From positions 205,731 to 269,730 of IMG/VR virus record IMGVR_UViG_3300017917_002434: a stretch of 64,000 nucleotides of DNA. The stretch is one strand, 5' to 3'. Made by a program: the position numbers and the translations under genes. How positions within the stretch are numbered: the first letter of the stretch is position 1; every line of letters starts with the position of its first letter. Of the stretch, positions 11,507-60,202 are shown in pieces. A model generated the notes under the pieces. It saw only the letters and a program-made list of their open reading frames with translations, did not search any database and was not told the DNA's origin.

Positions 11507-11534
11507 TTGACAATCAGACTTTTTGCTGTATAAT
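11507..11534 (+). promoter_or_regulatory. sigma70-type promoter (leaderless) for the heptose operon
   Basis: TTGACA-16 bp-TATAAT, with the ATG 6 nt downstream at 11541. Confidence 0.75.
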
Positions 11535-11540
11535 TACAGC

Positions 11541-11936
11541 ATGAGTCTGATTTTTGTTAACGGTTCTTTTGATATACTTCATCCAGGACACATCGAACTG
11601 CTAAACTATGCCAAAAGTTTAGGATCTCATCTCATGGTTGCCATAGATTCGGACGCTAGAATTACTAGTTTAAAAGGACCGACTCGGCCTATTAACAATC
11701 AACGTTATAGAGCGTTCATGTTAAAAAATCTTAGAGCAGTGGACGAAGTAGTAATTTTTGATTCTGACCAAGAATTAATAAACTTGATCGCTGCCTGTGA
11801 TATAATGGTAAAAGGCAGCGACTATATGGGTAAACCTATCGTAGGCGAAGAAGTCTGCGATGAAATTATATTTTTTGATAGATTATATGACTATTCAACA
11901 ACAAAAATCATTCAAGATATTGTTAATCGGAGATGA
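11541..11936 (+). CDS. rfaE2: HldE C-terminal-like adenylyl/cytidylyltransferase (RfaE domain II)
   Basis: NGSFDILHPGH (HxGH) motif, SLKGPTRPIN and VKGSDY. Start moved to ATG 11541. Confidence 0.9.
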   Translation: MSLIFVNGSFDILHPGHIELLNYAKSLGSHLMVAIDSDARITSLKGPTRPINNQRYRAFMLKNLRAVDEVVIFDSDQELINLIAACDIMVKGSDYMGKPIVGEEVCDEIIFFDRLYDYSTTKIIQDIVNRR

Positions 11937-12636
11937 TTGTTCTGATGTGTATCAATATGGCACAGTTGAAAGGTTAAGTCCCGAAGCACCCGTGCCGGTA
12001 TTTGTTCCTACCCACAAAGAAACACGGCCTGGAATGGCCGGTAATGTATCTAAGAATCTCGAAGCACTAGGGTGTGAAGTAAATTATATTCATGCTAAAA
12101 CATCCACTAAAACGAGACTGATAGATAAACGCAGTAATCAACATATTGCTAGGATAGATAATGACGAAATGTCTGAACCTATATCGTTCGAAACTGAAAT
12201 ACCTAAAATTTACGATGCTATTGTCGTCAGCGACTACAACAAAGGCACAGTCACATATGAACTCATCGAAGAGTTAATTGATACTAAAATTCCTGTGTTT
12301 ATCGACACTAAAAAAATTGATCTAGAAAGATTCCAGGGCAGCTGGGTGAAAATTAACGCTGCTGAGTATAGACTAATTAAAAGTGAATGTACAGGATTGA
12401 TCGTAACACTAGGTGAGGACGGTGCTCGAGTTATTCATCATGATATTCACTACCCAGCACCTAAAGTAGAAATCAGCGATGTCTGTGGTGCCGGAGATAC
12501 ATTTTTGGCTGCTCTAGCTTATAGATATTGCGAAACAAAAGACATCGACGAAGCTGTTAAGTTTGCTATCAAAGCAGCCAGTATCACAGTCCAGCATCTA
12601 GGTAATTACGCACCAACATTAGAGGAAATAAAATGA
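11887..12636 (+). CDS. rfaE1: HldE N-terminal-like heptose-7-phosphate kinase (PfkB family, RfaE domain I)
   Basis: RLSPEAPVPV, GMAGNV, VVSDYNKG and DVCGAGDTFLA (PfkB anion-hole) motifs. Start moved to ATG 11887. Confidence 0.9.
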   Translation: MTIQQQKSFKILLIGDDCSDVYQYGTVERLSPEAPVPVFVPTHKETRPGMAGNVSKNLEALGCEVNYIHAKTSTKTRLIDKRSNQHIARIDNDEMSEPISFETEIPKIYDAIVVSDYNKGTVTYELIEELIDTKIPVFIDTKKIDLERFQGSWVKINAAEYRLIKSECTGLIVTLGEDGARVIHHDIHYPAPKVEISDVCGAGDTFLAALAYRYCETKDIDEAVKFAIKAASITVQHLGNYAPTLEEIK

Positions 12637-13013
12637 CAGAAAGACTTACAGGAAAAGTAGATAAAGGATGGGGCTTTGAAATTATATGGGCTACCAACGA
12701 TCACTATTGCGGAAAAATTTTAGTATTCGAAAAGGCAGGAAATAAGTTTTCTATGCACTTCCATAAAACCAAAGATGAAACTTGGTTTGTTAATTCTGGC
12801 AAATTTAAATTACGTTGGATAGATACTAAAGATGCTAAAATCTATGAACAAGAATTAAATGAAGGCGATACTTGGCATAATCCTCCTTTACAACCTCATC
12901 AATTAGAAGCCATGACAGATGGTGCTATGGTGTTTGAAGTCAGCACAGCAGATTCTATAGAGGATAATTATCGATTAGTACCCGGAGACAGTCAAAAGAA
13001 AGCAGAACAATGA
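12633..13013 (+). CDS. Cupin-fold sugar isomerase-like protein
   Basis: KGWGFEI, SMHFH..KDETW..PH..E cupin metal-binding motifs. ATGA-coupled to the kinase gene. Confidence 0.75.
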   Translation: MTERLTGKVDKGWGFEIIWATNDHYCGKILVFEKAGNKFSMHFHKTKDETWFVNSGKFKLRWIDTKDAKIYEQELNEGDTWHNPPLQPHQLEAMTDGAMVFEVSTADSIEDNYRLVPGDSQKKAEQ

Positions 13014-13498
13014 ACATATATCTAGACATGGACGATGTTGTAGCTGATTGGTTTGGCTACGCTAGAGAGTATCTCAATGAGCCACTGTTCAAAGATGGTG
13101 ACATATTGCCCGAAGCTACTTGGCAAAAATTAAAAAATGATCAGCGTATGTATAGTAAACTTCCTGTTAAAAAGGGAGCATATGATTTAGTCAACTGGTG
13201 TAGAAATTATAGAGATACAAAAAACGCAGGACTTTATTTTCTCAGTGCTATCCCCAAAGGCAATGATATGCCCTGGGCACCTCAAGATAAAGTTTTTTGG
13301 GCACATGAATATTTTCCTGACATCCCTGTATTTTTAGGTCCATATAGTTTTGATAAGTGGGTTAGATGTTCTCCTGGAGATATCCTAATAGATGATCGTA
13401 GATCAAATTGTGAAGATTGGGAACGTGCCGGGGGCCTATCACACATATACCGCTCTTGGCCGGAATGTAAACTTTGGTTAGAGGACATTCTAAAATGA
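13010..13498 (+). CDS. HAD-superfamily phosphatase (5'(3')-deoxyribonucleotidase-like)
   Basis: IYLDMDDVVAD (DxD motif I) and DILIDDR (motif IV). Confidence 0.8.
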   Translation: MNIYLDMDDVVADWFGYAREYLNEPLFKDGDILPEATWQKLKNDQRMYSKLPVKKGAYDLVNWCRNYRDTKNAGLYFLSAIPKGNDMPWAPQDKVFWAHEYFPDIPVFLGPYSFDKWVRCSPGDILIDDRRSNCEDWERAGGLSHIYRSWPECKLWLEDILK

Positions 13499-14385
13499 TC
13501 ATAGTAACTGGTGGTGCCGGCTTCATTGGTTCTAATATTATAAAAGGTCTAAATGATAGATCTATTTCAAATATTATTGTTGTTGATGATATTAATCCCG
13601 ATAAAGAAAAAAATCTAGAAGATTTAAAATTTTCAGATATACTTTCCCCTCAAGATTTCTACGGCATCTGGAATCACTGGCACATCGTTGATGCGGTATT
13701 TCACGAAGGTGCTATATCATCTACCACAGAAAAAGATCAAAATAAGATAGATCAGTATAATCTTCAACCCGGTTATTGGCTAGTAGAGCAGGCTGCTAGA
13801 AACAATTTTTTATTATCTTATGCTAGCTCTGCTTCAGTCTACGGTGACAGCAATACCTTTAAAGAAAAACAGCCACTAAATCCTCAATCGCTTTATGCTA
13901 CTAGTAAAATGCTGTTAGATCAATATGTCTATAGCACATTATTAGATTATCCTGATACTAGAATACAGGGTTGGAGATATTTCAACGTCTATGGAAAAAA
14001 TGAAATTCACAAAAAAGATCAAGCGAGCCCGATAACGAAATTTAGTCAGCAGGCCAAAAATACAGGAAAAATAAAAGTTTTTAAAGGCAGCGAAAATTTT
14101 CAGCGAGATTTTATCTGTGTCAGCGACATAGCCGATATTAAAATAAAATCATTAGACAAGAACTTTAATGGAATTTTTAATCTCGGTACAGGAAAAGCAA
14201 TATCGTTTTTAGAAGTGGCTGAACTGATCAAAGAAAGATATTCGGCGACTATTGAAGAAGTAGAGTTTCCTCAAGAGCTTATCAATCAATACCAAAAATA
14301 TACCTGTTCGGATAATACAGAATTATTGAAGGTGATAGGAAATTATGATTTTACGTCTATTAGATCTTTTCTTTCAACGACATAA
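13495..14385 (+). CDS. hldD: ADP-L-glycero-D-manno-heptose-6-epimerase (extended SDR)
   Basis: IIVTGGAGFIGSN, HEGAISSTTE, YASSASVYG, YxxxK (YATSK), RYFNVYG and RDFI motifs, in a heptose gene context. Start moved to ATG 13495. Confidence 0.85.
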   Translation: MIIVTGGAGFIGSNIIKGLNDRSISNIIVVDDINPDKEKNLEDLKFSDILSPQDFYGIWNHWHIVDAVFHEGAISSTTEKDQNKIDQYNLQPGYWLVEQAARNNFLLSYASSASVYGDSNTFKEKQPLNPQSLYATSKMLLDQYVYSTLLDYPDTRIQGWRYFNVYGKNEIHKKDQASPITKFSQQAKNTGKIKVFKGSENFQRDFICVSDIADIKIKSLDKNFNGIFNLGTGKAISFLEVAELIKERYSATIEEVEFPQELINQYQKYTCSDNTELLKVIGNYDFTSIRSFLSTT

Positions 14386-14617
14386 TTTTCTTTTCTATCT
14401 CTAATCTAATATTTTTTAGTCTAGTTCTTTCTTCAGTCTGTCTCGTAAGATTAGAGATCATGTCGATCGATTCTACAGCAGCATCTAGATTTTTCGCCTG
14501 AGACTTAAATCTCTTATAGAGTTTTTCTAACTCTGTATCTTTAGTTTCTTCGATGAGTTTTTCGTAACGTCGGCAGTCTTCGATAAAATTTTTACTTTTA
14601 GTAATAGATAGTTTCAT
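14360..14617 (-). CDS. Hypothetical coiled-coil protein
   Basis: 85-aa ORF coupled to the upstream gene; K/E-rich and helical. Confidence 0.6.
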   Translation of the reverse strand: MKLSITKSKNFIEDCRRYEKLIEETKDTELEKLYKRFKSQAKNLDAAVESIDMISNLTRQTEERTRLKNIRLEIEKKIMSLKEKI

Positions 14618-15000
14618 AATGAACTTCCCATTAATAATATTGTGTCGATTTTAGTTTTGATTATTTTATTAGTTAATGTAGTTTTTAAACCCGTGTGTAC
14701 ACCTTTAGGCAAAACGTCGATCATTGACCAACAAAAAGTTTGATTATTTGACGGGACAAATTCTTGATCTACTAAGCAGATGTAAGTAGAAAATTCAAAT
14801 CCGCTGTCTTGACTAAGATATAATTCTACCGGAACTAACCTAGCATCTTTACCATAGTATTCGTAGATGATAGCTTGAGCGTCTTCTACTACAGATTTAT
14901 CTCTAACAAAGCTAGGAACTGTCCATTTGAGATCTTCTAGTATCATTAAGATTCTAGAAGTTTTTTTTGATATAAACAGGATTCCGGCATGTTTCTGCAT
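14614..15000 (-). CDS. Nudix-fold protein with degenerate Nudix box
   Basis: AGILFISKKTSRILMIL N-terminal strand pattern; the Nudix box is replaced by WTVPSFVRDKSVVEDAQAIIYEYYG. Start chosen 5 nt after a TATATA late-like box. Confidence 0.5.
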   Translation of the reverse strand: MQKHAGILFISKKTSRILMILEDLKWTVPSFVRDKSVVEDAQAIIYEYYGKDARLVPVELYLSQDSGFEFSTYICLVDQEFVPSNNQTFCWSMIDVLPKGVHTGLKTTLTNKIIKTKIDTILLMGSSL

Positions 15001-15011
15001 GCCTTTATATA

Positions 15012-16442
15012 TCATCCTTCTAAATCAAAGCTCCAATATCCGGCTGTGTATTCGCCTTCGAAAGATTTAAGCCATTGGCCGTCTTCCCATTTATATTGGA
15101 TGCCAGTTTTGAGATTTTTGATATAGTATGGTTGAGAAATTTCAACTGACGGATCAAAGATCACAGTCCAGTCGGTACCGTTCCATTCTACGATAGAATT
15201 AGCGACTGCTACAAAATCTGAATCATCGGAATTTTTCCAAGCATCTGCTCCGTCCGAATTAGCCACCGAACCAATATCTTCTAATATAAGATATTTCATA
15301 CCTACTAATAATCCTGTTGTGGGATCAAATGTTTGAGGATTGATAATAGCATTGATGACTAAATCAGTCTGCGGCTCAGAATCAGAATCAAAGTCTACTA
15401 CTAAAAATTGACTGTCTACTTCGTTGATACTAAATGTGCCTACGAGTTCGTAACCACTAGGTTGTAAAAATCTAATACGACTAATTCCGGGTCTGTATTT
15501 TCCATACTGAGGAATAATTTTATTCCAATCAATCGCCCCAGCGGTTTTCTTAGGTATATCTAGTCCGCTTTCTACTATAGCCTCGTTGACATCTAAGGCA
15601 CTGACATAGTAAGAACCAGTCTCAACACCTGTAACTGTCTTAGAAGACAACAGTAATACTCCGAAATTTCCCGGTGTAGTAATAATAGATGTTGATTTTA
15701 TGTCTTTATTATCAACTGGACTATTAAACGCTAATTCTGCTAGAGGTTTTAACTGCCCATCATCATCAAACATATTCATGATAATGTTCTGTACCACACC
15801 AAGTTTCTTAACCTTAACTGGAGGACTGATATAAATCGGCATCTCAAAATCAAGAGAACAGATGTCTATATCAACTTCTGTGCCTTGAGGTATAGATCGA
15901 GATGTAAAATTTGAAGCGGTTAGTTCGACTACACTTAGGCTGGTCCAATCGATATAATTATCTGTAGTTTGTACCTCTAGACTGGGGTTGAATAATACTA
16001 GTATTTGCTCTAGTAATTGTAATTTTTGATCTGTGTTAGAACTCCAGATGTCTGCCCGCATACTTAATTTAAAAGGTGTAGGCATTAGTCGTTCAACAGT
16101 ATAGCCGCCCCCCTGGGTGTTGTTGTATATTGGCTCGCCGGTCTCGTCATCAAAGGATTCATACGATCTTCCTCGAATACTGACCTTACTAACATAACTA
16201 GCATCGGCTAGTCTATTTCTATCTAATTCTATTCCTGTGATATAACACGCGATCTTTGGAACACTAGGCAGTTTATTTTCTGAATTTTCTCTGATGATCT
16301 GTGCTACTTGCTTGGTAAGATCGCCATAGGCAACAGGGACTTGTTTCAGAGATCCGTCGCCGGCTTGGTACTTAAAACCAATGAAGATTCTCATAAACTG
16401 AGTTACATATCTTCGTATCTGTCCATCATAGAAAAAATCCAT
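15012..16442 (-). CDS. gp15: Tail sheath stabiliser / tail terminator, T4 gp15-like, with C-terminal extension
   Basis: N-terminus FFYDGQIRRY..F..F..QVPVAYGD resembles gp15; adjacent to gp14 and gp13. Confidence 0.8.
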   Translation of the reverse strand: MDFFYDGQIRRYVTQFMRIFIGFKYQAGDGSLKQVPVAYGDLTKQVAQIIRENSENKLPSVPKIACYITGIELDRNRLADASYVSKVSIRGRSYESFDDETGEPIYNNTQGGGYTVERLMPTPFKLSMRADIWSSNTDQKLQLLEQILVLFNPSLEVQTTDNYIDWTSLSVVELTASNFTSRSIPQGTEVDIDICSLDFEMPIYISPPVKVKKLGVVQNIIMNMFDDDGQLKPLAELAFNSPVDNKDIKSTSIITTPGNFGVLLLSSKTVTGVETGSYYVSALDVNEAIVESGLDIPKKTAGAIDWNKIIPQYGKYRPGISRIRFLQPSGYELVGTFSINEVDSQFLVVDFDSDSEPQTDLVINAIINPQTFDPTTGLLVGMKYLILEDIGSVANSDGADAWKNSDDSDFVAVANSIVEWNGTDWTVIFDPSVEISQPYYIKNLKTGIQYKWEDGQWLKSFEGEYTAGYWSFDLEG

Positions 16443-17656
16443 TATTCGTCCGCCTTAGGTCTCAATGCTTTGCTCAAGCTCTGTTTTTCTTTTACTAGCT
16501 TGCCGTCTATCATACGCTCATTGGTATTATTAATGAACGTACCTTTCTGATTTTGTCTTGTTTCTCTACCTTCAAATCTTTCTCCAGATTCGGTATCCGT
16601 AGTTCCGAGATTGCTCATTGTCATTCTTACATTGTCTTCGTACTTGACCCATCTACGTCCATTAAATCTAAATAATCTCTTAGGGAAATAATCTGTTCGT
16701 AGACAGAACTGTCCTTCGACAGGATTTCCAGGAAATGTAATACCACTGGTAAATGGAGCACCGTTAGGAGTAACGCCATCTTCATGATAGTTTTGATAAC
16801 CATCTTTAGTCGGTGTTGCTATGATAACGCTGGCATCAATTCCAGATCCGTCATTACTGGCTTCTATTTCGCCAGCATCGGTAGTAACTAATTTAACATT
16901 GCCTTGTTCATCAAGCGGCACAGTATAATACATAGTAGTGTCATAACCGCTCTTAGGAGAGTCTGATTCTGCTTGATCCAGAACTGCTTCAGTGATACGC
17001 ATTTCTGTTTCATAGGTACTCATGATATCACGCAATGTTGTGTTAGTATCTTCGCCGGTGTCATCGGCTAGACCATCTAAGATTTGTTTAAATTCTTGAC
17101 TGTCAACTAATGGCGTACATTTTGCTCTATAAAGATGAGGATACCATGTAGCTGAAAAACCTTCTGCGGCACGATTAACTTCTTCTATAACATAAAATCT
17201 TTTTAGGGCAAATTTTAAATCATTAAGTGCGTGATAATCTTTGAGGTGAGGCAATTCGATAACATCACCCGCCAGCAATTTTCTACCAAGTTTTTCCACA
17301 GTATCGTTAATATGAAACGTTATGAAAATAGTATCGTTTTGTAAAAATAATCCAAACTGTGTTAGATTAAAATCTAAATCTGTTATATTGTATACACCTC
17401 TTAAAACATAAACATCGGGGTCGTATTTTCTATCTCGATTTTCTAAAAATAACAAATCTTGTATCTGTAGCTCGGGAATTCCGCCAGTATACACGGGTGT
17501 TGTTGGTGTGCTAGCACCGGGCAACGGATCGCCGGGTCCTATATATTTGTGAACCAATACATCAACACCGCCGACTTGAAACATTTCCCAGACGGTTTTG
17601 TCGATAAATTTGTAATCATTGCCCTTTTCTGGGCGATAAAGCGAAAGTCTTGGCAT
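16442..17656 (-). CDS. gp14: Neck protein, T4 gp14-like
   Basis: LLFLENRDRKYD, FGLF and GDVIELP motifs, plus synteny. Start moved to ATG at 17656. Confidence 0.75.
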   Translation of the reverse strand: MPRLSLYRPEKGNDYKFIDKTVWEMFQVGGVDVLVHKYIGPGDPLPGASTPTTPVYTGGIPELQIQDLLFLENRDRKYDPDVYVLRGVYNITDLDFNLTQFGLFLQNDTIFITFHINDTVEKLGRKLLAGDVIELPHLKDYHALNDLKFALKRFYVIEEVNRAAEGFSATWYPHLYRAKCTPLVDSQEFKQILDGLADDTGEDTNTTLRDIMSTYETEMRITEAVLDQAESDSPKSGYDTTMYYTVPLDEQGNVKLVTTDAGEIEASNDGSGIDASVIIATPTKDGYQNYHEDGVTPNGAPFTSGITFPGNPVEGQFCLRTDYFPKRLFRFNGRRWVKYEDNVRMTMSNLGTTDTESGERFEGRETRQNQKGTFINNTNERMIDGKLVKEKQSLSKALRPKADE

Positions 17657-17663
17657 AGTCATA

Positions 17664-17684
17664 TATTTACCGCTACGATAAATA
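17664..17684. promoter_or_regulatory. Back-to-back late promoters (TAAATA) for gp14 and gp13
   Basis: TATTTA at 17664-17669 (minus-strand TAAATA) and TAAATA at 17679-17684. Confidence 0.65.
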
Positions 17685-17689
17685 CTAGC

Positions 17690-18454
17690 ATGAGCCAACT
17701 TGACCAAGAAAAACAGAAAGTATTCGACTACTGCCGTTTGATGCTGGGCGACGGTATGATCGACGTAGAATTAGACCCACAACACTACGAAACAGCGTTA
17801 CAGCGTAGTCTAGGAGTTTTTCGCCAACGTGGTGATAATTCTGTAGAAGAAAGTTTCGCATTTTTGACTTTACAAGAAAATCAAAATGTTTATACACTAC
17901 CAGACGAAATTCAAGTAGTTAGGGAAATATATCGTCGAAGTATTGGATCTAGATCGGGTGGTGGAAACGGCGGTACAGTGTTTGAACCGTTTAACTTGGC
18001 CTATACAAACACTTATCTGTTAAGCTCGACTAATATGGGCGGATTACTAACCTATGAATTATTCGCAGGATATCAGGAACGTGTGGGTAAGATGTTTGGT
18101 AGCTTCATTCAATTTACTTGGCATGCTCAAAGTCGTAAATTAACTATACATCAGCGACCTAGAACAAACGAAGAAATTATGCTTTGGTGTTATAATACAC
18201 GACCGGATGTTGCTATTTTAGTCGATACTTACGCCGGTCAGTGGATCAAAGATTATACATTAGCCAACTGTAAAATAATGCTCGGCCAAGCTCGTGAAAA
18301 ATTTGCCAGTATTGCTGGTCCTCAGGGCGGCACAGCACTCAACGGTGCTAGCATGAAAGCAGAAGGTCAAGCAGACATCGATAGGCTTACAGCAGAATTG
18401 GTTAATTATGTTCCAGGACACGCTAACGCCAGTTATACATTTGTTGTGGGATAA
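17690..18454 (+). CDS. gp13: Neck protein, T4 gp13-like
   Basis: WIKDYTLANCKIMLG..REKF..IAGPQGGTALNG C-terminal signature. Start moved to ATG 17690. Confidence 0.85.
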   Translation: MSQLDQEKQKVFDYCRLMLGDGMIDVELDPQHYETALQRSLGVFRQRGDNSVEESFAFLTLQENQNVYTLPDEIQVVREIYRRSIGSRSGGGNGGTVFEPFNLAYTNTYLLSSTNMGGLLTYELFAGYQERVGKMFGSFIQFTWHAQSRKLTIHQRPRTNEEIMLWCYNTRPDVAILVDTYAGQWIKDYTLANCKIMLGQAREKFASIAGPQGGTALNGASMKAEGQADIDRLTAELVNYVPGHANASYTFVVG

Positions 18455-18456
18455 TT

Positions 18457-18801: not shown

Positions 18802-18830
18802 TTGACAATTTAAATATTCTATTGTATAAT
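18802..18830 (+). promoter_or_regulatory. Consensus sigma70 promoter for dNMP kinase
   Basis: TTGACA-17 bp-TATAAT, followed by a GGAGG RBS and ATG 18850. Confidence 0.85.
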
Positions 18831-18849
18831 AACCTTAATGGAGGATATT

Positions 18850-19509: not shown

Positions 19510-19807
19510 TACCCTCTTTAGCTAATACACGCTGACAGTTAGCACACACTGTTTTAAGATTAGCTACTTTACAGTTATTAAGATCTTCATCAACATGATA
19601 TACTGCGAATACCTCGGGATGCAGTGATTTAAAACCGCATCGATCGCAAGAAGTTTTCTTTCTATAACCTGCCCTATACCATCTAGGTATTCCGTGATAT
19701 TTTCCGTGCTTTAAGCATATCTCACAGAGAGATCTGTAATATATCTTTTTTCCTTTTCGATAGTTTATAGCAGCCGGTCTTTGTCCGCATTTACATAGGG
19801 GTCTCAT
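19472..19807 (-). CDS. HNH endonuclease with N-terminal Zn ribbon
   Basis: CKC..CEIC, CDRC..HVDEDLNNC..NL..VCANC. TAAATA sits 5 nt upstream of the ATG at 19807. Confidence 0.8.
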   Translation of the reverse strand: MRPLCKCGQRPAAINYRKGKKIYYRSLCEICLKHGKYHGIPRWYRAGYRKKTSCDRCGFKSLHPEVFAVYHVDEDLNNCKVANLKTVCANCQRVLAKEGIKWKQGDLVADF

Positions 19808-19923
19808 ATATCTATTTAAGAAAATTGGACCTTTTCTGCCCCTTTTCCTATGGTTTAAACGCTGTGTTTTTTGGTTAGCCGAATAAATATTATACAAGAT
19901 TCAAACCATCAGGAGATAACGGA

Positions 19924-23308: not shown

Positions 23309-23344
23309 AACAAATGATAAATAACAATACCGGAGCATAAGAAT

Positions 23345-23992: not shown

Positions 23993-24018
23993 AAGCCCGG
24001 AATTCCCGGGCTTTTTTT
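23993..24018 (+). terminator. Rho-independent terminator
   Basis: AAGCCCGG-AATTC-CCGGGCTT followed by a T-run. Confidence 0.85.
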
Positions 24019-24034
24019 ATCACTAAATAATATT

Positions 24035-25992: not shown

Positions 25993-25999
25993 GTATAGT

Positions 26000-26482: not shown

Positions 26483-26490
26483 ATACTGAT

Positions 26491-27054: not shown

Positions 27055-27055
27055 T

Positions 27056-27613: not shown

Positions 27614-27641
27614 AAATAGGCTCTTCGGAGCCTATTTTTTT
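27614..27641 (+). terminator. Rho-independent terminator (UUCG loop)
   Basis: AAATAGGCTC-TTCG-GAGCCTATTT followed by TTTT. Confidence 0.9.
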
Positions 27642-27655
27642 CATTAAATAGTTGT

Positions 27656-29242: not shown

Positions 29243-29255
29243 GATAAATATAAAC

Positions 29256-37849: not shown

Positions 37850-37906
37850 CAAGTCCTCTCTAACCACAGTTTATTTAGTGGGTATATTATTCAAATAAAT
37901 AGAAAC

Positions 37907-44461: not shown

Positions 44462-44490
44462 TTGATTTTTTATCATGAATCTGTTATTAT
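44462..44490 (+). promoter_or_regulatory. sigma70-type promoter (leaderless)
   Basis: TTGATT-17 bp-TATTAT with TGn extension; ATG 6 nt downstream. Confidence 0.6.
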
Positions 44491-44496
44491 TATAAA

Positions 44497-50491: not shown

Positions 50492-50953
50492 ATGCAGCTC
50501 AATCCGTGTTATTTATATTCGAATCGAATGGACATATATACTAATCTTGGCTCTTGGACAAAGGAGAGGTTTAGAAAAGTGTATCAACGAACAATGAAAA
50601 TCTATAAGGGCGTGGATAATCGTCTAGACTTCCAAGTCCGCAATAACGACAATAAGCCTAAGGATATCACCGATCTAACCAGTGTTACTTTTAATATAGT
50701 AGCAGTAGATACAAAAGGTATCCAATTACAAAAAGCAGTTACTATCGAAACGCCAGCACAGGGTAAAATGTTTGTACTCCTAACTGAAGAAGAAATCCAG
50801 GATTTAGAACGTGGGTACTATCATTTCAGCATGTTTTATATTGATAGTGATGGTAATAGGTTCCCATTATACGGAGACAGCCAGTATGATGCTTTGGGAC
50901 AATTACACGTAATCGATGGTGCTTTTGATATTGACAGCACGACTGTAATCTAG
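50492..50953 (+). CDS. Ig-like/BppU-like structural protein
   Basis: Late box TAAATA at 50464; beta-sandwich-like pattern (LDFQVRN..KDIT..GKMFVLLT..GYYHFS). Confidence 0.45.
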   Translation: MQLNPCYLYSNRMDIYTNLGSWTKERFRKVYQRTMKIYKGVDNRLDFQVRNNDNKPKDITDLTSVTFNIVAVDTKGIQLQKAVTIETPAQGKMFVLLTEEEIQDLERGYYHFSMFYIDSDGNRFPLYGDSQYDALGQLHVIDGAFDIDSTTVI

Positions 50954-50959
50954 TATAAT
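50931..50959 (+). promoter_or_regulatory. Consensus sigma70 promoter (leaderless) for primase
   Basis: TTGACA-17 bp-TATAAT; ATG 6 nt downstream at 50966. Confidence 0.85.
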
Positions 50960-50965
50960 TAGTCT

Positions 50966-51973
50966 ATGGCTCTGGTCGTAGACATCTTTCAAAAACATCT
51001 TCCTTATAAAAAGAAGCAAACTCCCAGCGGATGGATCAGTTTTGATGCTCCGTGTTGTCATCATCGGGGTGAAGGCACTGATACTAGACAGCGGGGTGGA
51101 GTGAAATTTTCTGACGGTTTAGTATTCAATTGTTTTAATTGTGGATATACTGCCAGTTGGAAACCGGGTAGACAGATCAGTCAAAAATTACGACAGTTAA
51201 TGATTTGGTTGGGTGCTCCTGACGATGATATCAACATGATGGTGTTTGAAGCACTGAAAACAGAAAGCGGTGCTGAAGATACTACCAAAGATCGAGAATT
51301 AATTGATTTCGTTAATAAAGATCTTCCAGACGGTGCTTTACCCATATCAGAGTGGATTGATCAAGAAATAGGTCACGATCTCGAAATACAGTTAGCTGAG
51401 GTGGTAAGTTATCTAGTAGATCGAGGTTGCGATCCATTAGATGATAGATTTTATTGGACTCCTATTGATATCAAAGATAGAGTTATCATACCCTTTACCT
51501 ATGGTGGCAGAATCGTCGGTTGGACTGCTAGAAAAGTTAAAGAAGGCAAACCAAAATATCTGTCAGACCAACATCCTAACTTTGTTTTTAATCTAGATTC
51601 AATCAAACAAGATCAACGATATCTTTTCGTAGTCGAAGGTCCTTTTGATGCTATGGCTGTCAACGGCGTAGCACTACTACACAACGAAATATCAGAAAAT
51701 CAAGCAAGGCTGATAAACAAGATGGGCAAAGAAGTTATAGTAATTCCAGATCAAGACAAAGCAGGTAGTAAACTTATAGAACATGCCTTGAAGTGGGATT
51801 GGGCTGTGGCATTTCCTACATGGCATGATGATGTTAAAGATTGTTCAGATGCTGTAAGGAGGTATGGTAGTTTGTTTGTAGCTGTAGATGCCATCTCAAC
51901 TGCTCAGCAAGGTGCGATTCGGATAAATTTATATAAGAACAAATTTGATAAAAAGGTACAGGAAAATGTTTAG
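50966..51973 (+). CDS. gp61: DNA primase (T4 gp61-like; Zn finger + TOPRIM)
   Basis: CC..CFNC Zn finger; TOPRIM VEGPFDA and PDQD motifs. Confidence 0.88.
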   Translation: MALVVDIFQKHLPYKKKQTPSGWISFDAPCCHHRGEGTDTRQRGGVKFSDGLVFNCFNCGYTASWKPGRQISQKLRQLMIWLGAPDDDINMMVFEALKTESGAEDTTKDRELIDFVNKDLPDGALPISEWIDQEIGHDLEIQLAEVVSYLVDRGCDPLDDRFYWTPIDIKDRVIIPFTYGGRIVGWTARKVKEGKPKYLSDQHPNFVFNLDSIKQDQRYLFVVEGPFDAMAVNGVALLHNEISENQARLINKMGKEVIVIPDQDKAGSKLIEHALKWDWAVAFPTWHDDVKDCSDAVRRYGSLFVAVDAISTAQQGAIRINLYKNKFDKKVQENV

Positions 51974-52981: not shown

Positions 52982-54144
52982 CAAAATGTGTAAATGCTTA
53001 TATGAATCTCAGCGTTCATCCAAATGGTGTAGTAAAGCCATGTTGTATGAGCAGAAAGATTTTCGTAACAGATGATAAAAAACAATCACTGGAATCAGCT
53101 AAGATCAAAGATTTTTGGCAGAGCAAGGATCGACAATCTTTTATACAGAGATTAGAGCAAGGCGAACAGTTATCAGAATGTTCTAGTTGCTGGGCCGAAG
53201 AACGAGCAGGAAAAAAATCTAAACGGTTGCGTGACAACGAGCTGTGGGGCGAAAATAATTTCGATGCCAGCAGCCAACCAGTGGTGCTAGATATCAGCAT
53301 GGACAATCTATGTAATCTACGCTGTCGCATCTGTGGGCCTGAAAATTCCAGTCAATGGCAAGCTGAAGAATCTAAAAGACTAGGCGATAAAATGCCTAAG
53401 ATGTTTAAAGTAAAAGACCAATGGCAAGAATTAATAGATTTCAGCAAATCAGTACAGCACATTGATTTCAGCGGTGGAGAACCATTCTATATCGACAACC
53501 ATTGGAAATTATTAAAGCATTTGGTAGAAAATGGTCGTAGCCGCAGTATAAGTCTACACTACAACACCAATGGAACAATATTTCCTAAAGAAAACATAGA
53601 GTTATTAAATCAGTTTAAATCTGTAGATATACAGATCAGTACAGACGGTATTGATAAAAAATTTGAATATCTACGACATCCTGCTGTATGGGATGAACAT
53701 GTGTCTAATATAGAAGAATTTAAAAAGCAAAACTGGAAGATAGGTGTGTGTTTTAGTCTCAGCGTGTTCAATGTCAACGATGTATTTGAAACCTATGAAT
53801 TCTATAGATCCAAAGGACTTAGTTTTTATCTCAACATAGTACACGGCGATCACAGTGTACAGATAATGCCTAGAGACCTAAGAAATCAGATTATTAGAAA
53901 ATTAGAATCCTGCCATAGCAGAGTAGATCAGAAAGATTGGGATGAAAATAAATCGGTGATCGTAGGCTATCTAAACAGTCCCTTTGACCTTAGTTGGAAA
54001 TGGCAGACATTTTGGCAGGCTACTTATAATCGCGATCAATTGCGGCAGCAGAATTATACTGAAGTGTTTCCTGAGACTTGGAAGATGGTAGAGCCTTGGC
54101 TTGCTAGTACTAGAATAAGAGTGTATAATATTAATAATGTATAA
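52978..54144 (+). CDS. Radical SAM protein with N-terminal SPASM/twitch-like domain
   Basis: CNLRCRIC (CxxxCxxC), GGEPF and NTNGT motifs; N-terminal C..PCC..CSSC. Confidence 0.9.
   Translation: MTKCVNAYMNLSVHPNGVVKPCCMSRKIFVTDDKKQSLESAKIKDFWQSKDRQSFIQRLEQGEQLSECSSCWAEERAGKKSKRLRDNELWGENNFDASSQPVVLDISMDNLCNLRCRICGPENSSQWQAEESKRLGDKMPKMFKVKDQWQELIDFSKSVQHIDFSGGEPFYIDNHWKLLKHLVENGRSRSISLHYNTNGTIFPKENIELLNQFKSVDIQISTDGIDKKFEYLRHPAVWDEHVSNIEEFKKQNWKIGVCFSLSVFNVNDVFETYEFYRSKGLSFYLNIVHGDHSVQIMPRDLRNQIIRKLESCHSRVDQKDWDENKSVIVGYLNSPFDLSWKWQTFWQATYNRDQLRQQNYTEVFPETWKMVEPWLASTRIRVYNINNV
54101..54129 (+). promoter_or_regulatory. sigma70-type promoter (leaderless)
   Basis: TTGCTA-17 bp-TATAAT; ATG 7 nt downstream at 54137. 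Confidence 0.7.
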
Positions 54145-56250: not shown

Positions 56251-56476
56251 AGCAGTAGAGCTATTGAAGTGGTTACCTCAAGAAGAAGAAAACATCGAAA
56301 TTGACTGGCCCAAAGTACACAAGACCATAGGTTTGGATCAGACCCAGTGGTTGCTCAAACAGTCACGATACGACTGCCAGATCATACTGGAACGCAGAGA
56401 CGTTTACTGTCGTTTGATCGCTGAATTTTACAACGAACATACATTATTAAATTATCAGCTAAAGTGGGCTAAATAA
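56240..56476 (+). CDS. Hypothetical protein
   Basis: 78-aa ORF overlapping the helicase stop. Confidence 0.6.
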   Translation: MKSKAVELLKWLPQEEENIEIDWPKVHKTIGLDQTQWLLKQSRYDCQIILERRDVYCRLIAEFYNEHTLLNYQLKWAK

Positions 56477-56479
56477 TGG

Positions 56480-56824
56480 ATGCGTGCAAAAGAATTTATC
56501 ACTGAACGTACTTTCCCCCAGCGTAAAAGCTCGGTGATGAGTACCACATTCCATTTTCCTACCATGCCCTCTGCTAACCCCTATGCTGCCTATAGATTTG
56601 GCATGGCCATGGCAGATCACACTCTGACCTACCCGGAAGGCCCTGTGAGCAATCATGCTGTGATAGTAGCATATACTCCTGAAGAGGAAGAGATCATCAA
56701 AGGTGCTACTCGCCAGACTGGGCACAAGGGCAAATTAGCCGCAGATCGTGGCAGTCATGAGCCCCAGGATACCTATACGCAGAGCCCTGTAGCCCAAAGA
56801 AAAAAGAACAAGTACGGAGTCTAG
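56480..56824 (+). CDS. Small protein with capsid-targeting-like N-terminus
   Basis: Starts MRAKEFITE; TAAATA 4 nt upstream. Confidence 0.7.
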   Translation: MRAKEFITERTFPQRKSSVMSTTFHFPTMPSANPYAAYRFGMAMADHTLTYPEGPVSNHAVIVAYTPEEEEIIKGATRQTGHKGKLAADRGSHEPQDTYTQSPVAQRKKNKYGV

Positions 56825-58559: not shown

Positions 58560-58947
58560 CAGAGTTTAAGAACTTCTGTAGTGAATAAAACCAGTTGCCC
58601 AGCTGTGTGAATCTGGGATCTGCGACCATGTCACCCAGTGCATAGTATGTGCTTATGCCCAGAGTAGCATAGTAGTCCATGCTCAGTCCTCTACGCTGTC
58701 CGTACTCTGGTAATAGTGATGTAAAGAACAAGCAGGTATCAGCAAAGTCTTTGAACGCTGCGGAATTGACTTCTTGATATAACAATAAGTAGCGTTCAGC
58801 AAATGAAGGATCGGGGATTAGATCTACACGGCGTAAGCGACTGTCTAGCAATTGACTCAAATACCAATACAGTGACTCGGGACATTCAAAGCCCGTTTCA
58901 GAACTATGATCAACTAACAGCTTAAAGAACTGTGCTTGTGTAGTCAT
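58519..58947 (-). CDS. Hypothetical late protein
   Basis: TAAATA 5 nt upstream of the ATG at 58947 (start moved). Confidence 0.7.
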   Translation of the reverse strand: MTTQAQFFKLLVDHSSETGFECPESLYWYLSQLLDSRLRRVDLIPDPSFAERYLLLYQEVNSAAFKDFADTCLFFTSLLPEYGQRRGLSMDYYATLGISTYYALGDMVADPRFTQLGNWFYSLQKFLNSAIKPEQRLQLFPI

Positions 58948-58978
58948 GCAATTATTTACAAAATTCTTAAATAACTGT

Positions 58979-59206
58979 ATGCACATAGAGTTCAATTTGC
59001 CCACGGGTGCTGGTGGTCAGAGTGCCCTATATTTCAACACTGTGCTAGACCAACACTTGCTAGAGTGGAGTCTACAGTATCACATTGACTACCGTAAAAC
59101 ACTGACCTACTACAAAGCATGGATTTGGTTGCCCGAGGAACAGGATTACACACTGTTTGCTCTAACGTGGCAGTGGGCTAGCCCGAAATGGGTCCTACAG
59201 GCGTAA
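58979..59206 (+). CDS. Hypothetical late protein
   Basis: TAAATA 5 nt upstream of ATG 58979 (start moved). Confidence 0.65.
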   Translation: MHIEFNLPTGAGGQSALYFNTVLDQHLLEWSLQYHIDYRKTLTYYKAWIWLPEEQDYTLFALTWQWASPKWVLQA

Positions 59207-59346: not shown

Positions 59347-59568
59347 CTACCTCAGGCTGTCAATGAGTTCTTTCACGTCCTCAGTGACCTCTTCATACTG
59401 GTCGAAGACCGCAGCGATCATCAGCTGATGTACGGTCTCGGCATCCTTCTTAGTGTCTCCGGGTAGGCTACGCTTGAGCTGCTCTACAGCAGCTTGGCTA
59501 TCGCAGTTCCACAGCAGCTCTGCTAGTGCATGCTGCCGCTTAGTTAGCCCGTGTAGTTGTATAGTCAT
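59347..59568 (-). CDS. Early-region hypothetical protein
   Basis: 73-aa ORF at the end of the leftward array. Confidence 0.7.
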   Translation of the reverse strand: MTIQLHGLTKRQHALAELLWNCDSQAAVEQLKRSLPGDTKKDAETVHQLMIAAVFDQYEEVTEDVKELIDSLR

Positions 59569-59578
59569 AAGGGAGCCT

Positions 59579-59701
59579 TTAAGCTATTAGGGTCCAGTAT
59601 AGGGTGAGCACTAGAGCATATATGATCAGTGCGGGCCGTAGCTGCTGCCATGTGTCCCGGAGGATGAACTCTAGGTATTCTTGATCTTGTTGCTTAGTCA
59701 T
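59579..59701 (-). CDS. 40-aa membrane peptide
   Basis: Hand-translated MTKQQDQEYLEFILRDTWQQLRPALIIYALVLTLYWTLIA; overlaps the previous stop. Confidence 0.55.
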   Translation of the reverse strand: MTKQQDQEYLEFILRDTWQQLRPALIIYALVLTLYWTLIA

Positions 59702-59879
59702 AGTATTCTCCATTGCGGATGCCCAGTGTGCCTGCCCACATGATCAGCAAGCCTACTGCTGAGACTGCCACAGAAGTCAACAGCTCACTGTCTGTGATTG
59801 AGTTCTCTACTCCACCTACTCCAAACATGGTCAGGACTAATCCCAGCATGACCAACAACATTCCAGTGTTTGTTTTCAT
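59694..59879 (-). CDS. Small two-helix membrane protein
   Basis: GGAGCGAACG RBS; two hydrophobic segments. Confidence 0.75.
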   Translation of the reverse strand: MKTNTGMLLVMLGLVLTMFGVGGVENSITDSELLTSVAVSAVGLLIMWAGTLGIRNGEYYD

Positions 59880-59931
59880 CGTTCGCTCCTTTGTTTAAGT
59901 GTTTATAGTATATGATCTCTGTGCCAAACTG

Positions 59932-60162
59932 TCAACCAAAATGCCGGATTAACCCGCCAGTGCACAGGGCTATTGCCACAGCGTTGATCAGCATCTGCGG
60001 GTAGTTCTTTACCCTCACAGTCCAAGTAAAGTAGGCTACAGCCCCTAGCAGTCCGAATGTGATGTTCCAGGGTGCGAACTCTGGGAAGAAGTTCATCACT
60101 GTGTACATTAGGAGCACGAACACTGTGCCCACCCATTGTATTATGTCATTCGCAGTCTTCAT
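59932..60162 (-). CDS. Small three-helix membrane protein
   Basis: Hydrophobic 76-aa ORF with a leaderless sigma70 promoter. Confidence 0.75.
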   Translation of the reverse strand: MKTANDIIQWVGTVFVLLMYTVMNFFPEFAPWNITFGLLGAVAYFTWTVRVKNYPQMLINAVAIALCTGGLIRHFG

Positions 60163-60202
60163 GTTCGTATTGTACGATCTCTAGCCCAAACTGTCAACCA
60201 AA

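What the first reader, a model, noticed from the sequence alone, without database searches (positions are those of the whole stretch)
11507..60197. Pervasive leaderless transcripts from both late and sigma70 promoters
Seen for late boxes: TAAATA followed by exactly 5 nt and then ATG at 17690, 24035, 26491, 27656, 29256, 58979 (+) and 19807, 58947 (-). Variants occur at 58446 (TAACTA+5), 15000 (TATATA+5), 26000 (TAAGTA+4) and 56480 (TAAATA+4), none with an obvious Shine-Dalgarno. Seen for sigma70: the -10 box lies 6-7 nt before the ATG at 11541, 44497, 50966, 54137 and 60162(-). Established: transcription starts about 5-7 nt after such boxes, so +1 would fall at or near the AUG. Inference: a deliberate leaderless-translation programme covering terminase, primase and neck genes. 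It might resist host translation shut-off or point to a host rich in leaderless mRNAs. Sheath, tube, gp32 and the early genes keep strong SD sites.
Basis: partly seen in the sequence, partly recalled or inferred. Interest (0 to 1): 0.6.

Follow-up and report, generated by a model that had tools for sequence, protein, structure and literature searches.

The report
Promoters fused directly to start codons
In this large freshwater phage, about a third of the predicted promoters sit so close to a gene's ATG that the messenger RNA should begin at the start codon itself. This design is known from other phages and bacteria, but I found no report of it for T4-type late promoters.

Summary
The window is the last 64 kb of a 269,730-bp IMG/VR contig. 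It comes from a T4-superfamily jumbo myovirus whose large terminase is 53% identical to that of Pseudomonas phage PA5oct.

- **Late boxes.** TAAATA is the rarest hexamer of its composition. 36% of copies lie in the 6% of DNA that is non-coding. 16 of 144 copies are followed by exactly 5 nt and ATG (P about 1e-8), and all 16 ATGs open ORFs of at least 75 aa.
- **Sigma70 promoters.** TTGACA-N17-TATAAT promoters show a matching peak at 6 nt.
- **Geometry.** Both spacings put +1 on the A of ATG.
- **Leader lengths.** Spacings are bimodal: no leader, or a leader long enough for a Shine-Dalgarno site.
- **Conservation.** Box and spacing are kept in a complete relative and in dozens of related contigs, while the spacer letters change. 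The primase promoter keeps the design down to 35% protein identity.
- **Supporting facts.** A gp55-type late sigma factor is encoded. Cultured relatives (PA5oct, GAP32, Phosso, T4) lack the spacing peak.

The leaderless architecture is therefore well supported, but no transcription start has been mapped. The proposed purposes, shut-off resistance or a leaderless-rich host, are not supported. Abundant proteins keep Shine-Dalgarno sites and minor ones are leaderless, which suggests dosage setting and compaction.

The parts
11507..11543 (+). Sigma70-type promoter fused to the start codon: TTGACA (11507-11512), 16 nt, TATAAT (11529-11534), 6 nt, ATG 11541. Gene 11541-11936, cytidylyltransferase-like.
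   Evidence: 12/12 match; PF01467. The G001 orthologue keeps TTGACA-18-TAAAAT + 5 + ATG.
17656..17692 (.). Back-to-back late boxes between divergent genes. On the + strand, TAAATA 17679-17684 + 5 nt + ATG 17690 (neck/adaptor Ad2-like, 17690-18454). On the - strand, TAAATA = 17664-17669 with ATG at 17662 (+1) or 17656 (+7) (virion structural gene 16442-17662).
   Evidence: phrog_211 and phrog_11591. The + site is identical in G001. The spacing of the - site is non-canonical, so that site is uncertain.
18802..18840 (+). Sigma70-type promoter TTGACA-17-TATAAT (ending at 18830) + 7 nt + ATG 18838. Gene 18838-19509.
   Evidence: 12/12 match. ATG is the first start after the in-frame stop.
19805..19818 (-). 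Late box (TAAATA on the - strand = 19813-19818) + 5 nt + ATG 19807. Gene 19472-19807, 111 aa, unknown function.
   Evidence: The G001 orthologue (75% identity) has TAAGTA + 5 + ATG.
19884..19926 (+). Comparator: leadered late promoter of the tail sheath gene. TAAATA 19884-19889, 34 nt including the Shine-Dalgarno site GGAG, ATG 19924.
   Evidence: (phrog_10581, E = 3e-211).
23318..23347 (+). Comparator: leadered late promoter of the major tail tube gene. TAAATA 23318-23323, 21 nt including GGAG, ATG 23345.
   Evidence: phrog_4542, E = 2e-51.
23993..24037 (+). Terminator, late box and AUG in one module: hairpin 23993-24013 plus a T-run, TAAATA 24024-24029, 5 nt, ATG 24035. Gene 24035-25159, tube-like minor protein.
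   Evidence: (terminator scan). The G001 orthologue (49% identity) keeps hairpin + TAAATA + 5 + ATG.
25990..26002 (+). Variant late box TAAGTA (25990-25995) + 4 nt + ATG 26000. Gene 26000-26482, resembling the small terminase subunit.
   Evidence: ATAAGTA + 4 variable nt + ATG is kept in all 57 related loci recovered.
26480..26493 (+). Late box TAAATA (26480-26485; its TAA is the stop of the upstream gene) + 5 nt + ATG 26491. Gene 26491-27054, virion structural protein.
   Evidence: TAAATA + 5 variable nt + ATG in 58 of 58 related loci.
26494..27096 (+). The stretch covered by near-identical contigs of a freshwater metatranscriptome (26494-26665, 26679-26831, 26807-27096). Nothing lies on 26332-26493.
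   Evidence: The first contig starts 3 nt after the A of ATG 26491. Depth is low and these are assembled contigs, so this is consistent with a 5' end at the ATG but does not prove it.
27614..27658 (+). Terminator, late box and AUG in one module: hairpin 27614-27637 plus T7, TAAATA 27645-27650, 5 nt, ATG 27656. Large terminase gene 27656-29242.
   Evidence: 72 of the 80 related loci carry hairpin + T-run + TAAATA + 4-5 variable nt + ATG. The other 8 use the same ATG without the box: 6 have a Shine-Dalgarno-like AAGGA and 2 follow the upstream gene's stop directly.
29245..29258 (+). Late box TAAATA + 5 nt + ATG 29256. Gene 29256-30998, virion structural protein.
   Evidence: Box kept in the related loci. 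The G001 orthologue (65% identity) has TAAATA + ttaac + ATG.
37865..37909 (.). Back-to-back late boxes between divergent sugar-nucleotide enzyme genes. On the - strand, TAAATA = 37872-37877 + 4 nt + GTG 37867 (gene 37079-37867). On the + strand, TAAATA 37896-37901 + 5 nt + ATG 37907 (gene 37907-38674).
   Evidence: The + site is kept in G001. The GTG start on the - side makes that side less certain.
44462..44499 (+). Sigma70-type promoter TTGATT-17-TATTAT + 6 nt + ATG 44497. Gene 44497-45696, unknown function.
   Evidence: The G001 orthologue (45% identity) has TTGATC-17-TAATAT + 6 + ATG.
50931..50968 (+). Sigma70-type promoter TTGACA-17-TATAAT + 6 nt + ATG 50966. DNA primase gene 50966-51973.
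   Evidence: 18 of 20 related contigs, down to 35% protein identity, keep a -35 hexamer, a spacer of about 17 nt, a -10 hexamer, 5-6 nt and ATG, with changed spacer letters.
54101..54139 (+). Weaker sigma70-like site TTGCTA-17-TATAAT + 7 nt + ATG 54137. It lies inside the end of the upstream gene 52978-54144. Gene 54137-54829.
   Evidence: The 8-nt overlap with the upstream gene means translational coupling is an equally good reading here.
56470..56482 (+). Late box TAAATA + 4 nt + ATG 56480. Gene 56480-56824.
   Evidence: The G001 orthologue (29% identity) keeps TAAATA + atgg + ATG.
58945..58981 (.). Back-to-back late boxes with 31 nt between the two start codons. On the - strand, TAAATA = 58953-58958 + 5 nt + ATG 58947 (ORF 58519-58947, 142 aa). 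On the + strand, TAAATA 58968-58973 + 5 nt + ATG 58979 (ORF 58979-59206, 75 aa).
   Evidence: Both ORFs are of unknown function, have in-frame upstream alternative starts and found no G001 match, so whether they are genes is less certain.
60160..60197 (-). Sigma70-type early promoter TTGACA (60192-60197), 17 nt, TACAAT (60169-60174), 6 nt, ATG 60162. ORF 59932-60162, 76 aa.
   Evidence: The neighbouring promoter (-10 at 59907) has a similar sequence, but with a 27-nt leader carrying AAGGAG.

Best explanation
These are promoter and start-codon fusions. The -10-type recognition box sits so that RNA polymerase starts on the A of the ATG. The mRNA then has no 5' leader and no Shine-Dalgarno site.

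Two polymerase forms appear to be used. One is host sigma70 holoenzyme on TTGACA-N17-TATAAT, with 6 nt before the ATG. The other is polymerase carrying the phage's gp55-type late sigma on TAAATA, with 5 nt (sometimes 4) before the ATG.

Translation would then begin by ribosomes binding the 5'-terminal AUG directly. That route exists in all bacteria and usually yields less protein than a Shine-Dalgarno start in Proteobacteria.

The phage appears to use the design for low-copy proteins: large and small terminase, neck and minor virion proteins, primase, and nucleotide-sugar enzymes. The major capsid, sheath, tube and gp32 genes keep leaders with strong Shine-Dalgarno sites. The design also makes very compact units: terminator, box and AUG in about 45 bp, and divergent gene pairs 28-40 bp apart.

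Shown here: the boxes, their spacing statistics, their conservation, and the gp55 homologue. Inferred: the exact transcription start, the mode of translation initiation, and the dosage rationale.
For: 1. Motif behaviour. TAAATA is 2-4 times rarer than every other A4T2 hexamer, and 36% of copies lie in the 6% of DNA that is non-coding.
2. Sharp spacing peaks at ORF starts for both classes, repeated in genome G001.
3. The two peaks differ by 1 nt, as known geometry predicts. The T4 box TATAAATA spans -13 to -6 (PMC2988020), so TAAATA + 5 nt puts +1 on the A. A sigma70 -10 hexamer spans -12 to -7, so 6 nt puts +1 on the A.
4. Spacings are bimodal: 4-6 nt, or 15-35 nt with a Shine-Dalgarno site, and almost nothing at 7-14 nt. 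A promoter explains this; a generic AT-rich element does not.
5. The base before the ATG is a pyrimidine in 40 of 47 late sites, against 55% in the background (P = 1e-5). This fits the pyrimidine(-1)/purine(+1) preference at transcription starts (from my own knowledge).
6. A gp55 homologue is present: phrog_12791 with E = 4e-80, and T4 gp55 with E = 2e-7. ATAAATA is the predicted late motif in the relatives CBB and GAP32 (PMC5259590).
7. Conservation with turnover of the spacer letters: large terminase in 72 of 80 loci, gene 26491 in 58 of 58, gene 26000 in 57 of 57, primase in 18 of 20 down to 35% identity, and most G000/G001 orthologue pairs.
8. Intrinsic terminators lie directly upstream of the boxes at 24035 and 27656, leaving no room for a leader.
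9. The 8 relatives without the box use the very same ATG of the large terminase, 6 of them with a Shine-Dalgarno-like AAGGA. This confirms the start codon.
10. Metatranscriptome contigs begin 3 nt after the ATG at 26491, with nothing upstream.
Against: - No transcription start has been mapped. The RNA evidence is a few low-depth assembled contigs on one gene, and such contigs cannot show true 5' ends.
- No gp45 or gp33 homologue was found with the T4 gp45 query; only a gp44-like clamp-loader subunit was. Late activation may therefore differ from T4.
- Several sites lie 8-13 nt after an upstream stop codon (26491, 29256) or overlap the upstream gene (54137). Read-through transcripts with translational coupling could contribute there or dominate.
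- At +4 sites the start must shift by one base.
- One site uses GTG (37867), a poor leaderless start in E. coli (from my own knowledge).
- Upstream of 26491 an AAGGA lies about 13 nt before the ATG and could act as a distant Shine-Dalgarno site on longer transcripts.
Confidence: 0.75

Rival explanations
1. The boxes are real internal promoters, but most protein comes from longer polycistronic late transcripts. On those, the genes would be translated by coupling to the upstream gene or by initiation independent of a Shine-Dalgarno site. In that case the closeness of box and ATG reflects tight gene packing rather than a leaderless design.
For: - Short gaps after upstream stop codons at 26491 (8 nt) and 29256 (13 nt), and an overlap at 54137.
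- Other genes of the same operon, such as the head-closure gene 25552, have neither a box nor a Shine-Dalgarno site and start at overlapping ATAATG.
- Many genes in the contig lack a clear Shine-Dalgarno site.
Against: - Terminators lie directly upstream at 24035, 27656 and G000:171589.
- Divergent pairs (17690, 37907, 58979) and first genes after sigma70 promoters (11541, 18838, 44497, 50966) have no upstream gene to couple with.
- The spacing is exact to the nucleotide and differs by class. Packing alone does not predict that.
Confidence: 0.15
2. The AT-rich hexamers act at the RNA level, as unstructured, S1-binding translation enhancers just upstream of start codons that lack a Shine-Dalgarno site. 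They would not be promoters.
For: AT-rich, unstructured regions upstream of start codons help initiation where no Shine-Dalgarno site is present (general knowledge). Many genes in this contig lack a Shine-Dalgarno site.
Against: - Only TAAATA, out of 15 hexamers of the same composition, shows a spacing peak.
- The same hexamer lies 15-35 nt upstream of late genes that do have a Shine-Dalgarno site.
- The sigma70 class carries a matching -35 hexamer at 16-18 nt.
- TAAATA is avoided inside genes.
- Terminators directly upstream would leave no transcript that contains the element.
Confidence: 0.05
3. It is a chance product of AT-rich intergenic DNA and wrongly chosen start codons.
For: The genome has 40% G+C and AT-rich intergenic regions.
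Against: - Composition-matched and reversed-pattern controls, an independent genome, and conservation across dozens of contigs.
- At most sites the ATG is the first possible start of the ORF.
Confidence: 0.02

Closest known systems
Leaderless transcripts of Thermus phages phiYS40 and Lalka27a
   Same: Most transcripts of these phages start with the A or G of the initiator codon, including those from a phage-specific late promoter class (bioRxiv 10.64898/2026.04.20.719267, which cites the phiYS40 work).
   Different: Those hosts belong to Deinococcus-Thermus, where leaderless mRNAs are the norm (PMC12340547, PMC6028130). Their late box is TAGGGT, not a gp55-type TAAATA. Their transcription starts were mapped; here they are inferred. 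Here only about a third of promoters are of this kind.
Bacterial 'group C' gene-start pattern of GeneMarkS-2 (Actinobacteria, Deinococcus-Thermus)
   Same: A Pribnow-type box sits 6-8 nt from the start of first genes in operons, and other genes use ribosome-binding sites (PMC6028130). The sigma70 class here fits this exactly.
   Different: That is a property of cellular genomes and is rare in Proteobacteria (5.6%). Here a phage shows it, with a second, phage-specific box at its own spacing. The best candidate host bin shows little of it.
T4 late promoters (gp55, gp33, gp45; TATAAATA at -13 to -6)
   Same: The core box is TAAATA, there is no -35 element, a gp55 homologue is encoded, and the box lies before structural genes (PMC2988020).
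   Different: The first TA of the T4 consensus is not conserved here. T4 and the cultured relatives show no excess of TAAATA-N5-ATG. No gp45 or gp33 homologue was found with the T4 gp45 query.
Pseudomonas phage PA5oct and the GAP32/CBB group of jumbo phages
   Same: Closest cultured relatives: large terminase 53% and 44% identical, with the same gene order from neck to terminase. CBB and GAP32 have a predicted ATAAATA late motif and a gp55-like sigma (PMC5259590).
   Different: Their orthologous genes have leaders with Shine-Dalgarno sites, and the fused pattern is not enriched. The PA5oct paper reports only sigma70-like promoters and does not mention leaderless transcripts (PMC7318152).
Lambda cI transcript from PRM
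   Same: A sigma70 promoter placed so that the mRNA starts at the AUG, which gives low-level translation (from my own knowledge; cited as a reference in PMC12340547).
   Different: That is a single regulatory gene in a temperate phage, not dozens of genes in two promoter classes.

Membership tests
Leaderless mRNA genes | The primary transcript's 5' end coincides with the first base of the start codon | tested here: inconclusive
   Only assembled metatranscriptome contigs were available. The first one on gene 26491 starts at 26494, with nothing upstream. The caps on read mapping were reached.
Leaderless mRNA genes | A -10-type promoter box at the distance that puts +1 on the start codon, with no room for a Shine-Dalgarno site | tested here: met
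   Spacing peaks at +5 (late) and +6 (sigma70), with P between 1e-6 and 1e-9, repeated in G001. Geometry from PMC2988020.
Leaderless mRNA genes | AUG as the start codon, with a purine as the initiating base | tested here: met
   In the contig scan, the +4 to +6 starts in ORFs of at least 60 aa are ATG in all but one case, the GTG at 37867. The base at -1 is a pyrimidine in 40 of 47.
T4-type (gp55-dependent) late promoters | TATAAATA-like box with no -35 element | tested here: met
   The TAAATA core is invariant by selection. Only a weak A/G preference is seen at the two positions upstream, and nothing is conserved at -35. The leading TA of the T4 consensus is not kept.
T4-type (gp55-dependent) late promoters | A gp55 late sigma factor encoded by the phage | tested here: met
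   G000:152761-153612 (L093:462-1316): phrog_12791 with E = 4e-80, phrog_234 with E = 7e-24, T4 gp55 by phmmer with E = 2e-7.
T4-type (gp55-dependent) late promoters | The gp45 sliding clamp and gp33 co-activator | tested here: inconclusive
   T4 gp45 found nothing by phmmer, but a gp44-like clamp loader is present (E = 9e-19). gp33 was not searched for. CBB is also reported to lack detectable gp33 and gp45 (PMC5259590). The contig is only 76% complete.
T4-type (gp55-dependent) late promoters | Location upstream of late (virion and packaging) genes | tested here: met
   Boxes lie before the sheath, tube, neck, terminase and structural genes and after the major capsid gene. They also lie before two sugar-nucleotide enzyme genes.
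Sigma70 promoters | -35 TTGACA and -10 TATAAT hexamers separated by 17 +/- 1 nt | tested here: met
   12/12 matches at 11507-11534 and 18802-18830. They are the only two such matches in 19.6 kb. The primase promoter is conserved in 18 of 20 relatives.

The most novel reading that the evidence does not exclude
An abundant clade of freshwater jumbo phages may run a phage-specific leaderless translation programme in a proteobacterial host that itself makes few leaderless mRNAs. A phage-encoded ribosomal protein bS21, present in the complete relative G001, might retune initiation on host ribosomes to support it. Switching a gene between leaderless and Shine-Dalgarno forms, as seen among relatives for the large terminase and for the gene after gp55, would then be an evolvable dial for protein dosage.
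Probability: 0.1. Interest if true: 0.8.

Novelty: new member of a known kind. Interest (0 to 1): 0.45.

Why it matters
- **Annotation.** Gene callers that expect a ribosome-binding site will misplace these starts. Several of the ORFs can be extended upstream.
- **Extent of the design.** Leaderless expression would extend to the T4-type late transcription system. I found no report of that in the paper library.
- **Natural comparison set.** The same genes are leaderless in this clade and Shine-Dalgarno-led in PA5oct and in a few close relatives. That makes it directly testable how much protein each design yields.
- **Minimal parts.** The modules of terminator, box and AUG in about 45 bp, and the divergent pairs 28-40 bp apart, are very small expression units.
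- **Host question.** If the host proves to be a proteobacterium with few leaderless genes of its own, how the phage gets enough translation becomes a real question. The bS21 gene in the relative would be a candidate answer.

Tried and rejected
- **Near-identical phage records.** None were found in the phage collection.
- **RNA evidence.** Only one metatranscriptome run held the stretch, and only as assembled contigs. It could not give true 5' ends.
- **Cultured relatives.** PA5oct, GAP32, Phosso and T4 were tested for the fused pattern and show no enrichment. Their orthologous genes have leaders. The trait could therefore not be tied to published PA5oct RNA-seq data.
- **Host identification.** There are no tRNA genes in the window. 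Large-terminase relatives lie on short contigs binned into two Polynucleobacter MAGs, one marine betaproteobacterial MAG and one Crocinitomicaceae MAG; this is weak evidence. The bS21 of G001 is 51-54% identical to the copies in three of those bins, so it does not discriminate.
- **Leaderless signature in the candidate host.** TATAAT-N6-ATG against the reversed control gave 25 against 18 in the Polynucleobacter bin. There is only a slight -10 peak at +6 in 359 kb of it. The 'leaderless-rich host' idea is therefore not supported, subject to the weak host assignment.
- **Phage-encoded initiation factors.** No IF3 C-terminal domain and no S1 domain were found in G000 or G001.
- **Literature.** The phiYS40 paper (PMC1885378) is not held, so that precedent is cited through a later preprint.

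Full report
**What the window is.**
The window is the last 64 kb of a 269,730-bp IMG/VR viral contig (G000). CheckV rates the contig 76% complete, and its G+C content is 40%. It encodes T4-superfamily functions:
- tail sheath, major tail tube, neck adaptor and head closure protein
- small and large terminase
- gp32, UvsX and primase

The large terminase is 53% identical to that of Pseudomonas phage PA5oct. It is about 44% identical to those of the GAP32/CBB group. Gene order from neck to terminase matches PA5oct. Hundreds of related contigs exist in metagenomes, including a complete 363,943-bp genome, G001, whose large terminase is 91% identical.

**Check of the observation.**
Two fail. There is no ATG at 15000 on the + strand; that place is the start of the minus-strand gene 14614..15015. 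The ATG at 58446 opens only 37 codons.

- 37907(+)
- 37867(-), which starts with GTG
- 18838(+), a perfect sigma70 promoter at +7
- the minus-strand partner of 17690

At most sites the ATG is the first possible start after the in-frame stop.

**Statistics for the late box.**
- TAAATA occurs 144 times on both strands of the contig. The other 14 hexamers of the same composition occur 320-659 times.
- 52 of the 144 copies touch the 6% of DNA that is non-coding.
- 16 copies are followed by exactly 5 nt and ATG, against about 2.5 per other offset (P = 9e-9). No other A4T2 hexamer has such a peak.
- All 16 of these ATGs open ORFs of at least 75 aa. 15 of them open at least 60 aa, against 18% of all ATGs (P = 1e-10).
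- The pattern read backwards matches 3 times against 16.
- In G001 the same analysis gives 11 sites at +4 and 14 at +5.
- Distances from TAAATA to gene starts are bimodal. They are 4-6 nt, or 15-35 nt with a Shine-Dalgarno site in between. There is almost nothing at 7-14 nt.

**Statistics for sigma70 promoters.**
I took promoters with at most one mismatch per hexamer and measured the distance to the next ORF-opening ATG. Seven sites are at +6 and one at +7. Three lie at 8-23 nt. A second group at 24-35 nt carries AAGGAG. With up to two mismatches in all, 8 ORF starts lie at +6, against 0.75 per offset (P = 1e-6). G001 has 4, 8 and 1 at +5, +6 and +7. In 19.6 kb of the window, the only two 12/12 promoters are the ones that abut ATGs at 11541 and 18838.

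**Why the spacings mean 'leaderless'.**
The T4 late box TATAAATA spans -13 to -6 (PMC2988020, which speaks of 'A(-13) in place of T'). TAAATA followed by 5 nt therefore puts +1 on the A of the ATG. A sigma70 -10 hexamer spans -12 to -7, so 6 nt does the same. The two classes thus peak one nucleotide apart, as their geometries predict.

The base before the ATG is a pyrimidine in 40 of 47 late sites of G000 and G001, against 55% in the background (P = 1e-5). That fits the usual pyrimidine(-1)/purine(+1) start preference, which I cite from my own knowledge.

The empty zone at 7-14 nt also makes sense. A leader of 1-8 nt is too short to hold a Shine-Dalgarno site and would spoil a 5'-terminal AUG.

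**Is TAAATA the late promoter?**
The contig encodes a gp55-type late sigma factor at G000:152761-153612 (phrog_12791, E = 4e-80; T4 gp55, E = 2e-7). The same hexamer stands 21-34 nt before the major tube and sheath genes, with GGAG in between. ATAAATA is the predicted late motif of the relatives CBB and GAP32, and CBB has a gp55-like sigma (PMC5259590). No gp45 was found with the T4 gp45 query, but a gp44-like clamp loader is present.

**Conservation.**
- **Large terminase.** 72 of the 80 related loci carry hairpin, T-run, TAAATA, 4-5 nt and ATG. The spacer letters vary: gttgt, aatgt, acagt, aagtt, gtcat, acact and others. The other 8 lack the box but use the very same ATG; 6 of them have a Shine-Dalgarno-like AAGGA and 2 follow the upstream gene's stop directly. 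This confirms the start codon.
- **Flanks of those loci.** Across the 74 distinct loci (498 kb), 177 of 407 TAAATA copies have an ORF-opening ATG at +5 and 23 at +4.
- **Gene 26491.** It keeps TAAATA + 5 in 58 of 58 loci.
- **Gene 26000.** It keeps the variant ATAAGTA + 4 in 57 of 57 loci.
- **G000 against G001.** Orthologue pairs with 29-90% protein identity mostly keep box and spacing with different spacers.
- **Primase.** The sigma70 promoter keeps a -35 hexamer, a spacer of about 17 nt, a -10 hexamer, 5-6 nt and ATG in 18 of 20 related contigs, down to 35% protein identity.
- **A marine relative.** One with 65% large-terminase identity has TAAATA + 7 + ATG.
- **Cultured relatives.** PA5oct, GAP32, Phosso and T4 show no excess of TAAATA-N5-ATG over the reversed control. 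The PA5oct and GAP32 orthologues have leaders with Shine-Dalgarno sites.

The fused design is therefore a trait of this environmental clade.

**Architecture.**
Three recurring layouts appear.
- **Terminator, box and AUG within about 45 bp.** This occurs at 23993-24037 and 27614-27658. It occurs again right after the major capsid gene, at G000:171589.
- **Divergent gene pairs.** Two boxes lie back to back and the start codons are 28-40 bp apart, at 17662/17690, 37867/37907 and 58947/58979.
- **A box overlapping the stop of the upstream gene.** This is seen at 26480.

**RNA evidence.**
One freshwater metatranscriptome holds part of the stretch. Near-identical contigs cover 26494-27096 only, which is gene 26491-27054. 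The first contig begins 3 nt after the A of the ATG, and nothing lies on 26332-26493. This is consistent with a transcript that begins at the ATG. It is weak evidence, because assembled contigs at depth 2-4 do not show true ends.

**What it is for.**
The abundant proteins have leaders with strong Shine-Dalgarno sites:
- major capsid protein (taaggagaactaatATG)
- tail sheath
- major tail tube (phrog_4542, E = 2e-51)
- gp32

The leaderless set consists of low-copy or enzymatic proteins:
- neck adaptor
- tube-like minor protein
- both terminase subunits
- two virion proteins
- primase
- a cytidylyltransferase
- two sugar-nucleotide enzymes

Leaderless initiation usually yields less protein in Proteobacteria (my own knowledge). 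I therefore read the design as a compact way to set low dosage. This is inference.

Nothing bears on resistance to host shut-off. For 'a leaderless-rich host', the only host hints are MAG bins: two Polynucleobacter, one marine betaproteobacterium and one Crocinitomicaceae. The Polynucleobacter bin shows only a slight -10 peak at +6, 4.2% of starts against about 1.8%. Leaderless-rich genomes are rare in Proteobacteria (PMC6028130). No IF3 or S1 domain is encoded by G000 or G001. G001 does encode a ribosomal protein bS21. Its identity to the bins' own copies (51-54%) does not discriminate among hosts.

**Comparison with what is known.**
A -10 box 6-8 nt from the start codon is the recognised signature of leaderless transcription (PMC6028130, PMC12340547). 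Thermus phages phiYS40 and Lalka27a have mostly leaderless transcripts, including those from a phage-specific late promoter class (bioRxiv 10.64898/2026.04.20.719267). Transcription-start maps of phiKZ and AR9 found no leaderless transcripts (PMC8244752, PMC5312081). The PA5oct paper describes only sigma70-like promoters (PMC7318152). Four searches of the paper library found nothing that links leaderless transcripts with T4-type late promoters. This is therefore a new member of a known kind. The principle is familiar; the promoter class, the phage clade and the extent are new.

**Verdict.**
- Observation: confirmed.
- Leaderless architecture: probability about 0.75, pending 5'-end mapping.
- Interest: moderate.

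Noticed in passing
L138:1453-1701 (-) = G001:C1:292290-292445: The complete relative G001 encodes an 82-aa ribosomal protein bS21 homologue (PF01165, E = 2e-16). None was found in the 76%-complete G000. bS21 sits by the anti-Shine-Dalgarno region of the small subunit, so it may bear on the choice of start sites.
   Followed up: partly
window 59900-63100, - strand: A cluster of small early genes. Each follows a near-identical cassette of TTGACAg(t/a)ttgg..TATA(C/A)T, a 25-35-nt leader and AAGGAGCGAAC before the ATG (at least 8 copies). The leaderless promoter at 60162 resembles its neighbour at 59907 with the leader missing, which could be a snapshot of a leadered unit turning leaderless by deletion.
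   Followed up: no
window 3421-11502, + strand: A single 2,693-aa ORF with a Shine-Dalgarno-like start (ctaaggataaaagATG). It was not characterised.
   Followed up: no
window 25990-25995 and related loci L009-L088: The gene resembling the small terminase subunit always carries TAAGTA rather than TAAATA, at +4, in 57 of 57 relatives. The G001 orthologue of gene 19807 also has TAAGTA. This may be a deliberately weaker variant of the late box.
   Followed up: partly
G000:C1:153647 versus its G001 orthologue: The gene just after gp55 has a -10 box 6 nt before its ATG in G000. In G001 it has a 21-nt leader with GGAG behind a TTGACA-TATAAT promoter. The large terminase likewise has a Shine-Dalgarno-like AAGGA in 6 relatives and follows the upstream stop directly in 2 more. 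Genes seem to switch between the two designs.
   Followed up: partly
L134, L136 (Polynucleobacter MAGs), L133, L135: Large-terminase fragments of this phage clade (65-86% identical) sit on short contigs binned into bacterial MAGs. This is a weak host hint towards Polynucleobacter or other Betaproteobacteria. The sampled MAG DNA has 41.5% G+C, close to the phage's 40%.
   Followed up: partly
window 25552 and related loci: The head-closure gene has neither a late box nor a Shine-Dalgarno site. It starts at a conserved overlapping stop/start (gcATAATG), so some genes in the late operon seem to rely on translational coupling.
   Followed up: no
window 37079-38674: Two divergent genes for nucleotide-sugar enzymes carry late-type boxes: one resembling UDP-glucose dehydrogenase, the other heptose kinase/adenylyltransferase. 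These auxiliary genes would then be expressed late.
   Followed up: no
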